Source of the DNA: Octopus sinensis
Taxonomy: Eukaryota
NCBI RefSeq assembly: GCF_006345805.1
Contig: NC_043015.1
Span: 51,212,001 to 51,276,000, forward strand
DNA length: 64,000 nt
Direction: 5' to 3'
Part shown: positions 25,736-26,257 of the stretch, in pieces
Numbering within the stretch: the stretch's first letter is position 1
Layout of the letters: every line of letters starts with the position of its first letter
Made by a program: the position numbers and the translations under genes
The notes under the pieces: model-generated
What the model was told of the DNA's origin: nothing
Database searches by the model: none
The model's input: the letters and a program-made list of their open reading frames with translations, nothing else

Positions 25736-25782
25736 AGGCCTGCTGATGAATACGTAAGTATGAAATCACGTGATACAGGTCT
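25736..25782 (+). ncRNA. Type I hammerhead ribozyme, copy 4
   Basis: Reads aggcctg CTGATGA atac gtaa gtat GAAA tcacgtga TA caggtct. Stem III is the perfect palindrome ATCACGTGAT. Predicted cleavage is 3' of 25775. Confidence 0.88.
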
Positions 25783-26210
25783 ATATTTTTTAAATGTCTT
25801 ACTTTGAAAAATTGCATTCGGTGGGATTAGTAATATTTTTGGTAGAAATGACTAATTGTCCCTCTTAGCGTGTGGCATCTATGTATAATGCCATCTGGCA
25901 TGTATGTATAATGCCCTCTATATATAAATTAATATGTTCAATAAGAAATAATTATTTTCGAAATTTTTTCTCTTATGAGGTTTTCACGCTATCTACCTGA
26001 CAATTTCTTGTTAAGTTTTCCTTATTAAGTAGTTGTCCTTAATTGCTAAATTTTTATTCCGAAAAAACTCTTCCTTTCCCGAAATGCAATTCGTAAAAGT
26101 CTGACATTTACAGGATGTAATATATGTAAACTCACCCATGTGCTTCGTTGATGTTGATCAGTTAGCTGATCGGCTTAAGCGAGGCAGGGTCGTTTATGTA
26201 TGATACATCC

Positions 26211-26257
26211 AGGCCTGCTGATGAATACGTAAGTATGAAATCACGTGATACAGGTCT
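26211..26257 (+). ncRNA. Type I hammerhead ribozyme, copy 5
   Basis: Identical to copy 4, 475 bp downstream. Predicted cleavage is 3' of 26250. Confidence 0.88.

What the first reader, a model, noticed from the sequence alone, without database searches (positions are those of the whole stretch)
25776..26250. Sense-strand ribozymes could cut the IFT80 pre-mRNA and release a 475-nt monomer
The right arm places hammerheads on the + strand, the strand transcribed for IFT80. Copies 4 and 5 are intact, with predicted cuts 3' of 25775 and 26250. Host transcription alone could therefore excise a unit-length RNA with 5'-OH and 2',3'-cyclic-phosphate ends, which are the ends RtcB-type ligases join. It would also sever a 35-kb intron, which could affect splicing or expression of a ciliary gene. 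The chemistry is established; activity in vivo is inference.
Basis: partly seen in the sequence, partly recalled or inferred. Interest (0 to 1): 0.72.

Follow-up and report, generated by a model that had tools for sequence, protein, structure and literature searches.

The report
Hammerhead-ribozyme repeat array inside an IFT80 intron
A young, selfish "retrozyme" repeat carrying self-cutting hammerhead RNA motifs sits head-to-head in a 35-kb intron of the cilia gene IFT80; the motifs are real and two lie on the gene's sense strand, but the mirror-image half of the array is predicted to hide one of the two cut sites, so this is an ordinary member of a known class, not a new regulator.

Summary
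Observation confirmed. A 475/476-bp unit forms a head-to-head inverted array: left arm 24019-25076 on the minus strand, right arm 25071-26403 on the plus strand. Each unit carries a type-I hammerhead motif. Intact plus-strand copies predict cuts after 25775 and 26250. IFT80 exons (12899-13034, 48249-48397) lie on the plus strand and flank a 35,214-nt intron that holds the array.

The motif is more than chance. A descriptor gives 0.025 hits per shuffled window. A covariance model built from four published, tested retrozyme hammerheads ranks the four intact sites top (16.1 and 14.1 bits). Rfam's own hammerhead models report nothing.

The locus fits an animal non-LTR retrozyme inserted the way Penelope-like elements insert: partial tandem, inverted 5'-truncated copy, (TA)n target, and a 13-bp flanking repeat.

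Interpretation partly supported. The chemistry and the strand are right. However, the same pre-mRNA carries the antisense arm first. The minimum-energy fold puts the hammerhead that cuts at 25775 (HHR4), and about 270 nt of the proposed monomer, into a duplex of about 975 bp. Only the hammerhead that cuts at 26250 (HHR5) stays free. The short palindromic helix III also suggests the ribozymes act in pairs. Release of the 475-nt monomer from host transcripts is therefore probably inefficient. Nothing could be tested in RNA data.

The parts
12899..13034 (+). IFT80 exon (upstream of the intron)
   Evidence: tblastn with a recalled human IFT80 probe, E = 5e-11. Borders ccag|TTGG and CTTG|gtaagt. 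Joined to the next exon it matches PF23335 at E = 1e-34. Homologues P0001-P0009 carry PF23335.
13035..48248 (+). IFT80 intron, 35,214 nt, GT...AG
   Evidence: Exon borders read. The probe alignment is contiguous across the two exons (query 456-510 and 506-559). The Pfam profile is contiguous at positions 162-253.
48249..48397 (+). IFT80 exon (downstream of the intron)
   Evidence: tblastn E = 3.6e-16. Borders ttttacag|GCTC and CCAG|gtaatt.
24006..24018 (.). Left copy of a 13-bp direct repeat ATTTGTATATATA, a candidate target-site duplication, at the end of a TA-rich microsatellite (23622-24018)
   Evidence: Read directly; microsatellite. This is weak evidence: the motif recurs in the left microsatellite.
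24019..25076 (-). Left arm: 2.2 units of the 476-bp repeat, with the unit sense on the - strand. It is 5'-truncated at the centre and its 3' end faces outward.
   Evidence: The inverted-repeat arms are 99-100% complementary over up to 602 nt.
24760..24805 (-). Hammerhead L1 (intact). C3 at 24799, A17 at 24766, predicted cut between 24766 and 24765. Helix III is 4 bp with a CGG loop.
   Evidence: Descriptor hit; model R1 14.1 bits.
24284..24329 (-). Hammerhead L2 (intact). C3 at 24323, A17 at 24290.
25071..25076 (.). Centre junction: 6-nt microhomology CTTATT shared by the inner ends of both arms
   Evidence: Read against the unit alignment.
25071..26403 (+). Right arm: 2.8 units of the 475-bp repeat on the IFT80 sense strand, 5'-truncated at the centre
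   Evidence: TRF period 475, 2.8 copies, 99% matches.
25260..25307 (+). Hammerhead 3 (copy 3): core mutated, A14->G at 25288. Presumably inactive.
   Evidence: It fails the descriptor. R1 gives only 9.2 bits.
25736..25782 (+). Hammerhead 4 (intact). C3 at 25743, A17 at 25775, predicted cut 25775|25776. Predicted to be buried in the inter-arm duplex.
   Evidence: R1 16.1 bits, E about 0.02. All positions pair with 24282-24332 in the MFE.
25776..26250 (+). Proposed 475-nt monomer (GC 33.5%)
   Evidence: MFE -146.6 against shuffles -94.7 +/- 6.2, z = -8.4. Circular fold -140.3 kcal/mol with 67% of bases paired. GC content.
26211..26257 (+). Hammerhead 5 (intact). C3 at 26218, A17 at 26250, predicted cut 26250|26251. 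It lies outside the mirrored part of the palindrome and folds locally.
26404..26416 (.). Right copy of the 13-bp direct repeat ATTTGTATATATA, followed by (TA)n to 26493

Best explanation
The locus is a very young insertion of an animal non-LTR retrozyme. This is a non-coding, AT-rich repeat of 475/476 bp whose RNA carries one type-I hammerhead ribozyme per unit.

The insertion has the structure that Penelope-like elements (PLEs) leave behind:
- a 5'-truncated partial tandem (the right arm);
- an inverted 5'-truncated copy abutting its 5' end (the left arm);
- a 6-nt microhomology at the join;
- a (TA)n-type microsatellite as target;
- a 13-bp direct repeat on both outer flanks.

I infer one reverse-transcription event, primed from both target ends on a circular or multimeric retrozyme RNA.

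On the IFT80 sense strand two hammerheads are intact. They have the architecture of tested invertebrate retrozyme ribozymes: 6-7 bp helix I, 4 bp helix II and a short palindromic helix III. They probably cleave best as a pair (double hammerhead).

In the host pre-mRNA the antisense arm is made first. It is predicted to zip up with the sense arm into a hairpin of about 1 kb that buries HHR4 and about 270 nt of the monomer. The expected products are therefore mainly an intact intron carrying a long double-stranded stem, and at most a single cut after 26250. The free 475-nt monomer is not expected in quantity.

Shown: the anatomy, the strand, the intron, the motif's significance, and the predicted energetics.
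Inferred: the insertion mechanism, ribozyme activity, masking in vivo, and any effect on IFT80.
For: - Unit and arms. The copies differ at only a handful of positions.
- Hammerhead: core and helices. Descriptor against 200 shuffles gives 0.025 per window. Model R1, built from the coral, mussel and two axolotl retrozyme hammerheads given in the supplement of PMC7229834, ranks the four intact sites first.
- The motif meets that paper's criterion CUGANGA/GAAAY/RUH. It shares the palindromic helix III: ours is AUCACGUGAU, coral ACAGUACUGU, mussel ACGCGCGU, axolotl ACACGUGU.
- Energy benchmark: the gap between the canonical fold and the MFE is 3.1 kcal/mol here. It is 3.6 for the efficient coral ribozyme and 6-7 for the others. 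The dimer MFE has an intermolecular helix III here, as in coral, mussel and Ax353.
- Retrozyme traits: GC 33.5%; a strongly self-paired monomer, z = -8.4; a flanking repeat longer than 4 bp. These match PMC7229834.
- PLE-type insertion traits are quoted from PMC8557442.
- Masking.
Against: - Rfam hammerhead models give no hit, even at E <= 10 on 81 nt.
- Helix II starts with A10.1-U11.1 instead of the highly conserved G-C (PMC4209133). I could not judge the loop 1-loop 2 tertiary contacts.
- No second locus of this family could be found in any collection. There is therefore no covariation, no copy number and no proof of mobility.
- No PLE gene lies in the window. The only reverse transcriptase that Pfam confirmed (16770-17459, RVT_1) also carries a PHD-like finger, so I read it as LINE-type; a degenerate RT-like stretch beside the array gave no Pfam hit in the one frame scanned.
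- The unit (475 bp) is above the 170-400 nt range reported for animal retrozyme RNAs.
- Masking rests on equilibrium folding. Co-transcriptional kinetics, proteins, helicases or RNA editing could leave HHR4 free for long enough.
- The flanking 13-mer lies in low-complexity DNA.
Confidence: 0.68

Rival explanations
1. Transcription of IFT80 lets hammerheads 4 and 5 cut efficiently. This releases the 25776-26250 RNA for circularisation by RtcB, severs the intron and measurably lowers or alters IFT80 splicing.
For: - Intact cores lie on the sense strand.
- The monomer is strongly self-paired.
- Invertebrate retrozyme hammerheads cleave at about 0.1-0.8 per min, and RtcB circularises the products in vitro (PMC7229834).
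- About 22 kb of intron remain to be transcribed after the site, so a ribozyme of that speed could cut before the 3' splice site exists. Fast intronic ribozymes abort splicing (PMC10919898).
Against: - HHR4 and about 270 nt of the monomer are predicted to be paired with the left arm as soon as they are made.
- The double-hammerhead geometry would need both copies free.
- A strong hit on an essential cilia gene should be selected against. Retrozymes are depleted from introns in Xenopus.
- Intron cleavage need not block splicing; I recall the exon-tethering work of Dye et al. 2006, which is listed in the references of PMC2288634.
Confidence: 0.17
2. The motif is a decayed or never-active hammerhead look-alike, and the array is inert satellite DNA.
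For: - No Rfam hammerhead hit at any threshold.
- A10.1-U11.1 replaces the conserved G-C.
- The custom model scores are modest (14-16 bits, rough E of 0.02-0.09).
- One of five copies already carries a core mutation.
Against: - All invariant core bases and all three helices are present in four copies.
- The architecture and energetics match ribozymes shown to cleave.
- The axolotl Ax353 ribozyme cleaves despite a U-U mismatch at the same helix II position.
- The association with a unit-length tandem repeat and a highly structured monomer is the retrozyme signature.
Confidence: 0.15
3. The head-to-head arrangement is an assembly artefact, such as a fold-back chimeric read, and the true locus is a plain tandem array. 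Masking would then disappear and the reader's model would gain.
For: - The arms are 99-100% identical.
- PLE-type inverted structures are known to trouble assemblies (PMC8557442).
Against: - The arms are unequal (1,058 and 1,333 nt) and end at different unit positions.
- The join is offset with a 6-nt microhomology; it is not a perfect fold-back.
- Both outer flanks continue in direct orientation into the same microsatellite and carry the same 13-mer.
- The structure is exactly what PLE insertions look like.
Confidence: 0.1
4. The biologically relevant product is the long intronic hairpin itself. It would be a substrate for ADAR editing or Dicer that yields small RNAs against the retrozyme family or marks the IFT80 pre-mRNA. 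The ribozymes would be incidental.
For: A predicted stem of about 975 bp, about 1,165 kcal/mol more stable than the separate arm folds. Established knowledge, cited from memory: intronic inverted repeats form dsRNA that ADAR and Dicer act on.
Against: There is no evidence of conservation or selection. The insertion is very young. No RNA data were available. A by-product is more likely than a function.
Confidence: 0.12

Closest known systems
[quoted passage not shown]
   Same: - One type-I hammerhead per unit of a short AT-rich tandem repeat.
- A catalytic centre fitting CUGANGA/GAAAY/RUH.
- Helix I of 6-7 bp, helix II of 4 bp and a short palindromic helix III.
- A strongly self-paired monomer.
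- A flanking duplication longer than 4 bp.
- No coding capacity.
   Different: - The unit is 475 bp; reported repeats are about 150-450 bp and reported RNAs 170-400 nt.
- A10.1-U11.1 stands at the base of helix II.
- The array is two opposed partial tandems, not one.
- Expression, circularity and genomic copy number are unknown.
- The host is not identified. By eye the repeat content looks cephalopod-like, but this is unverified, and no cephalopod retrozyme appears in the papers I could search.
Penelope-like elements (PLEs) and their pseudo-LTRs with hammerheads (PMC4209133, PMC8557442)
   Same: - Partial tandem plus an inverted 5'-truncated copy at the 5' end.
- Insertion into a (TA)n microsatellite.
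- A hammerhead with a small palindromic helix III suited to dimeric action.
- Hammerheads found in opposite strands a few hundred bp apart.
   Different: - No RT or GIY-YIG reading frame lies in or next to the array.
- The hammerhead is of the canonical kind, not the 'minimal' PLE kind with a 7-8 bp helix II and an unpaired base before it.
- No 30-40-bp tail was recognised.
Newt and salamander satellite 2 and axolotl retrozyme hammerheads
   Same: A palindromic CACGUG element in helix III (axolotl Ax353 has ACACGUGU), cleavage after A17, and better cleavage as dimers.
   Different: Helix III here can form 3 bp plus a tetraloop (4 bp plus a triloop in the left arm), so it is more stable than the 1-2 bp amphibian stems. 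There is no sequence relationship outside the core.
Conserved intronic self-cleaving ribozymes: the amniote intronic hammerheads (HH9 and HH10 are the names I recall from memory) and the CPEB3 ribozyme
   Same: A sense-strand ribozyme inside an intron that could sever the pre-mRNA before the downstream exon is made (PMC10919898).
   Different: Those are single-copy and conserved across species, and for CPEB3 the effect on expression has been shown. This one is a multi-copy, near-identical and evidently recent transposon insertion with no sign of conservation.

Membership tests
Hammerhead ribozyme, type I | Invariant core C3 U4 G5 A6 N7 G8 A9 ... G12 A13 A14 A15.1 ... U16.1 H17 | tested here: met
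   CUGAUGA / GAAA / UA is present in four copies. Copy 3 has G14.
Hammerhead ribozyme, type I | Three helices around the core, with helix I open (5' and 3' ends in helix I) | tested here: met
   Helix I has 7 bp, helix II 4 bp plus GUAA, and helix III 3 bp plus ACGU or 4 bp plus CGG. The canonical fold is -9.4 to -10.5 kcal/mol depending on construct, about 3 kcal/mol above the MFE, as for tested ribozymes.
Hammerhead ribozyme, type I | Score at or above the curated threshold of an Rfam hammerhead covariance model | tested here: not met
   No hammerhead family is reported at gathering score, nor at E <= 10 on 2.6 kb or on 81 nt. A custom model built from four tested retrozyme hammerheads gives 14-16 bits and the top ranks.
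Hammerhead ribozyme, type I | G10.1-C11.1 pair and loop 1-loop 2 tertiary contacts typical of fast natural hammerheads | tested here: inconclusive
   The 10.1-11.1 pair is A-U. Loop 2 is GUAA. Loop 1 is a multi-branch junction in the monomer fold. Mussel retrozyme hammerheads also lack most of the archetypal contacts and still cleave.
Hammerhead ribozyme, type I | Site-specific self-cleavage that leaves 2',3'-cyclic phosphate and 5'-OH ends | not testable with these tools
   This needs in vitro transcription or RNA end-sequencing.
Animal non-LTR retrozyme | A type-I hammerhead inside a short tandem repeat, one per unit | tested here: met
   Period 475, 2.8 copies on the + strand and 2.2 on the - strand.
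Animal non-LTR retrozyme | Low GC (<45-50%), no LTR, PBS or PPT, no coding capacity | tested here: met
   GC is 33.5%. The longest stop-free frames are 43-54 aa and have no homologues.
Animal non-LTR retrozyme | A highly self-paired monomer RNA | tested here: met
   z = -8.4 against 100 shuffles. The circular fold has 67% of bases paired.
Animal non-LTR retrozyme | A dispersed multi-locus family, co-resident with autonomous PLEs | not testable with these tools
   There is no other copy in the window. No eukaryote genome collection was on hand. All indirect searches were empty.
Animal non-LTR retrozyme | Expressed as linear and circular RNA of unit length | not testable with these tools
   No transcriptome data were available.
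Penelope-like element (autonomous) | An ORF with a telomerase-like RT and a GIY-YIG endonuclease between pseudo-LTRs | tested here: not met
   No ORF lies in the array. The one RT fragment Pfam confirmed in the window (16770-17459, RVT_1) also carries a PHD-like finger, so I read it as LINE-type. A degenerate RT-like stretch beside the array (about 27100-28900) gave no Pfam hit in the one frame scanned.
PLE-type insertion structure | 5'-truncated partial tandem, plus an adjacent inverted 5'-truncated copy, with a (TA)n target | tested here: met
   Arm geometry, centre microhomology and TA-rich flanks, compared with the description in PMC8557442.
Conserved intronic regulatory ribozyme (amniote intronic hammerheads, CPEB3 type) | A single-copy motif conserved across species at an orthologous intron position | not tested
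   No orthologous introns could be fetched. The near-identity of the five copies and the transposon structure argue for a recent insertion, not a conserved element.

The most novel reading that the evidence does not exclude
The head-to-head array is a single-event product of two-ended priming with rolling-circle reverse transcription of a retrozyme circular RNA by a Penelope-like enzyme, and it works as a self-masking unit. In host or read-through transcripts the antisense arm hides all but the outermost ribozyme. The intron would then yield a 1-kb double-stranded hairpin (editing or small-RNA substrate) plus one tunable cut that sets how much IFT80 pre-mRNA survives to be spliced.
Probability: 0.08. 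Interest if true: 0.65.

Novelty: new member of a known kind. Interest (0 to 1): 0.35.

Why it matters
If the ribozymes are active, this locus would be a natural case in which one transposon insertion delivers two things to an essential cilia gene's intron. One is a self-cleaving RNA on the sense strand. The other is its own antisense mask.

The locus also gives structural support for the current proposal that animal retrozymes are mobilised by Penelope-like elements. That proposal has so far been argued from phylogeny in vertebrates. Here a retrozyme array shows the inverted 5'-truncated copy, the (TA)n target and the flanking duplication typical of PLE insertions.

Otherwise it is an ordinary young repeat insertion. 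Intronic retrozymes are frequent in the one group where they were counted.

Tried and rejected
1. Rfam. No hammerhead hit on the whole window at gathering score, on 2.6 kb at E <= 10, or on 81 nt at E <= 10. Only low-complexity noise appeared: mir-297, a pestivirus UTR and bacterial sRNAs.

2. Other copies through translated frames.
- The 54-aa antisense frame across the ribozyme found no homologue in the 5.8-billion-protein search.
- Exact look-ups of three unit ORFs found nothing.
- A search of 1.84 billion representatives with a 48-aa frame returned one unrelated low-complexity repeat protein, P0010.

3. DNA pattern scans. The pattern CTGATGAATACNNNNGTATGAAAT gave one metagenome contig (L001). 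It is a chance match inside coding-like sequence, without helices I or III. Viral contigs gave none.

4. Naming the organism. The exon ORF is not on record. The nearest exon homologue sits on anonymous 0.8-0.9-kb contigs. ARAGORN finds no tRNA-like genes.

5. A PLE next to the array. The degenerate RT-like stretch at about 27,100-28,900 and the transposase-like remnant at 26,714-27,030 gave no Pfam hit (only one RT frame was scanned). The RT at 16770-17459 is RVT_1 with a PHD-like finger, which I read as LINE-type.

6. The single-copy MFE. It is not the canonical hammerhead. I first read this as evidence against activity. I rejected that reading when the four experimentally active retrozyme ribozymes behaved the same way or worse.

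7. A second ribozyme on the opposite polarity of the unit. None was found.

Full report
**What is in the sequence**

Between two TA-rich microsatellites (23622-24018 and 26393-26493) lies a 2,385-bp block (24019-26403). It is built from one 475/476-bp unit. The block is not a simple tandem. The right arm (25071-26403) holds 2.8 units on the + strand. The left arm (24019-25076) holds 2.2 units on the - strand. Inverted-repeat arms are 99-100% complementary over up to 602 nt.

An alignment of all full and partial units shows only a handful of differences:
- A14->G in the core of copy 3 (position 25288);
- one G fewer in the helix III loop of copies 4 and 5 (CACGTGA instead of CACGGTGA);
- four other single-base changes or indels.

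**The hammerhead**

Every unit carries CUGAUGA-(4 bp helix + GUAA)-GAAA-(short helix)-UA, flanked by AGGCCUG...CAGGUCU. With standard numbering, the + strand has C3 at 25743 and 26218 and A17 at 25775 and 26250. Two more intact motifs lie on the - strand, with cuts after 24766 and 24290.

A descriptor (helix I >= 5 bp, II >= 3 bp, III >= 2 bp, core, H17) finds exactly these four sites plus one unrelated site. It produced 5 hits in 200 dinucleotide shuffles of the whole window, or 0.025 per window.

Rfam's curated hammerhead models report nothing at any threshold I could set. I therefore made an independent test. The supplement of Cervera and de la Pena 2020 (PMC7229834) prints four retrozyme constructs whose hammerheads were assayed: coral, mussel and two from axolotl. 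I aligned their ribozymes and built a covariance model with the canonical 13 base pairs. I then scanned the window with filters off. The results were:
- right-arm sites 25737-25781 and 26212-26256: ranks 1 and 2, 16.1 bits, rough E of 0.02;
- the two left-arm sites: ranks 3 and 4, 14.1 bits;
- the core-mutated copy 3: 9.2 bits.

The motif also meets that paper's stated criterion for a catalytic centre, CUGANGA/GAAAY/RUH. Here it reads CUGAUGA/GAAAU/AUA.

Helix III here is AUCACGUGAU. It is a palindrome like those of the tested ribozymes (coral ACAGUACUGU, mussel ACGCGCGU, axolotl Ax353 ACACGUGU). PMC4209133 describes this architecture as typical of metazoan type-I hammerheads and as favouring action in pairs.

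Nearest-neighbour folding agrees. A single copy's optimum is not the canonical fold (-10.2 against -13.3 kcal/mol). The same holds for all four active ribozymes, with gaps of 3.6-7.4 kcal/mol. Two copies together fold into a textbook double hammerhead with a 10-bp intermolecular helix III (-35.5 against 2 x -13.3 kcal/mol).

Deviations that could lower activity:
- A10.1-U11.1 instead of G-C;
- loop contacts that I could not assess.

**The unit as an RNA**

The 475-nt monomer has 33.5% GC. It folds to -146.6 kcal/mol, against -94.7 +/- 6.2 for shuffles (z = -8.4). As a circle it folds to -140.3 kcal/mol with 67% of bases paired. It has no meaningful reading frame. These are the published traits of animal non-LTR retrozymes. 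The unit is somewhat longer than the 170-400 nt reported for their RNAs.

**How it got there (inference)**

- Both arms are 5'-truncated at the centre and have their 3' ends at the outer flanks.
- The inner ends overlap by a 6-nt microhomology, CTTATT (25071-25076).
- The block is bounded by the same 13-mer, ATTTGTATATATA (24006-24018 and 26404-26416), inside a TA-rich microsatellite.
[quoted passage not shown] I therefore read the block as one PLE-type insertion of a retrozyme. The cDNA was probably made from both target ends on a circular or multimeric RNA. The 13-mer is weak evidence on its own, because the context is low-complexity. The asymmetry of the arms, the offset join and the directly oriented flanks argue against a fold-back assembly artefact. 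Only reads can settle that question.

**Gene context**

- A probe of human IFT80 written from memory served only as a lead. It hit two + strand segments at E = 5e-11 and 4e-16, with contiguous query coordinates.
- Their borders are canonical: ccag|...CTTG|gtaagt and ttttacag|...CCAG|gtaatt.
- The spliced 95 residues match Pfam PF23335, IFT80 second beta-propeller, at E = 1e-34 over profile positions 162-253. Database homologues of the first exon carry the same domain.
- The intron is 13035-48248, or 35,214 nt.
- The array starts about 11.0 kb into the intron, and the right arm is on the sense strand.

**Where the interpretation needs correcting**

An IFT80 pre-mRNA contains the left arm first, and in this transcript the left arm is antisense to the unit. 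I folded 24019-26403 as one RNA, with these results:
- The whole block gives -1856 kcal/mol, against -257 for the left arm alone and -434 for the right arm alone.
- 975 of the 1,333 right-arm bases pair with the left arm.
- Every base of hammerheads 3 and 4 sits in that duplex. This is already so for nascent transcripts ending at 25790 or 25850.
- Hammerhead 5 lies beyond the mirrored part and keeps its local helices I and II.

The 5' end of the proposed monomer therefore depends on the one ribozyme that is predicted to be masked. If the ribozymes work as a pair, the cut at 26250 would suffer too.

This is equilibrium prediction, not kinetics. Local folding, proteins or editing of the duplex could open a window. 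From the sequence, the more likely outputs of host transcription are a long intronic double-stranded hairpin and at most a single cut after 26250. A transcript that starts inside the right arm would not be masked.

**Consequences for the host**

About 22 kb of intron follow the 26250 site. With the 0.1-0.8 per min rates reported for mussel and coral retrozyme ribozymes, a free ribozyme could cut before the 3' splice site is made. Published work shows that fast intronic ribozymes abort splicing and slow ones do not, and that the CPEB3 intronic ribozyme tunes its host's expression. Ribozyme cuts can also give exonuclease an entry site.

The idea is therefore sound in principle but not new, and here it is unproven. 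In Xenopus, 44% of retrozyme copies overlap introns, although they are depleted relative to intergenic DNA.

**Comparison and novelty**

The locus passes the testable criteria of a type-I hammerhead and of an animal non-LTR retrozyme. It fails the Rfam score criterion. It cannot be tested here for cleavage, expression or genomic copy number. It is not an autonomous PLE, because it has no RT/GIY-YIG frame. It shows no sign of being a conserved regulatory ribozyme.

I found no paper in the searchable library on cephalopod retrozymes or on head-to-head retrozyme arrays. The host species itself could not be established. I rate it a new member of a known kind.

**Dead ends**

All attempts to find a second copy of the family failed or gave chance matches: translated frames, exact ORF look-ups, and DNA pattern scans of metagenome and viral contigs.

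Noticed in passing
window 12404-12480 (+): A lone hammerhead-like motif on the IFT80 sense strand, about 420 nt upstream of the exon at 12899. It reads CUAUG-CUGAUGA-(helix II GCUUG/CAAGU closing a 44-nt hairpin)-GAAA-CUGAUAGGU-A|CAUAG. It passes my lenient descriptor (helices 5/5/3 bp).
   Followed up: partly
window 12404-12480 (+), follow-up: The motif above is unique in the window, gets no Rfam hammerhead hit and is not listed by model R1. With 0.025 chance hits expected per window, it is most likely coincidence.
   Followed up: partly
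window 23622-24018 versus 26393-26493: The left flank of the array is a compound microsatellite with a unit of about 33 bp (TATATTTGTATATATATATATGATG...). The right flank is almost pure (TA)n after a single ATTTGTATATATA. This asymmetry is what one expects if the array was inserted at the edge between the two repeat types.
   Followed up: partly
window 26714-27030 (-) and about 27100-28900 (+): Directly right of the array lies a short remnant that looks by eye like the C-terminal end of a mariner-type transposase. Next to it is a frameshifted reverse-transcriptase remnant (motifs LDQSKAFDRV and YVDDV seen by eye). Pfam gave no hit for the transposase-like frame or for the one RT frame scanned.
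   Followed up: partly
window 16770-17777 (+): A LINE-type reverse-transcriptase fragment (Pfam RVT_1, E = 1e-20) followed by a PHD/C1-like zinc finger.
   Followed up: no
window 8723-9411 and 10910-11743: Two other medium-period tandem repeats in the upstream intron: 245 bp x 2.8 and 216 bp x 3.6. Neither contains a CTGATGA core or a hit to model R1. ARAGORN finds no tRNA-like gene in them.
   Followed up: partly
window 29276-31934, 36383-36938, 38544-40125: Very long simple repeats inside the same intron: (ATG)n and (AAT)n totalling about 2.2 kb, (GTAT)n of 0.55 kb, and (AT)n of 1.6 kb. They make up a sizeable share of the 35-kb intron.
   Followed up: no
window 25770 and 26245 versus 24296, 24772, 25295: Copies 4 and 5 have lost one G in the helix III loop. 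This turns AUCACGGUGAU into the perfect palindrome AUCACGUGAU. The GG form favours a 4-bp hairpin within one ribozyme. The single-G form favours the 10-bp intermolecular helix of a double hammerhead (-14.9 against -13.9 kcal/mol). Whether this is chance or a switch between monomer and dimer modes is open.
   Followed up: partly
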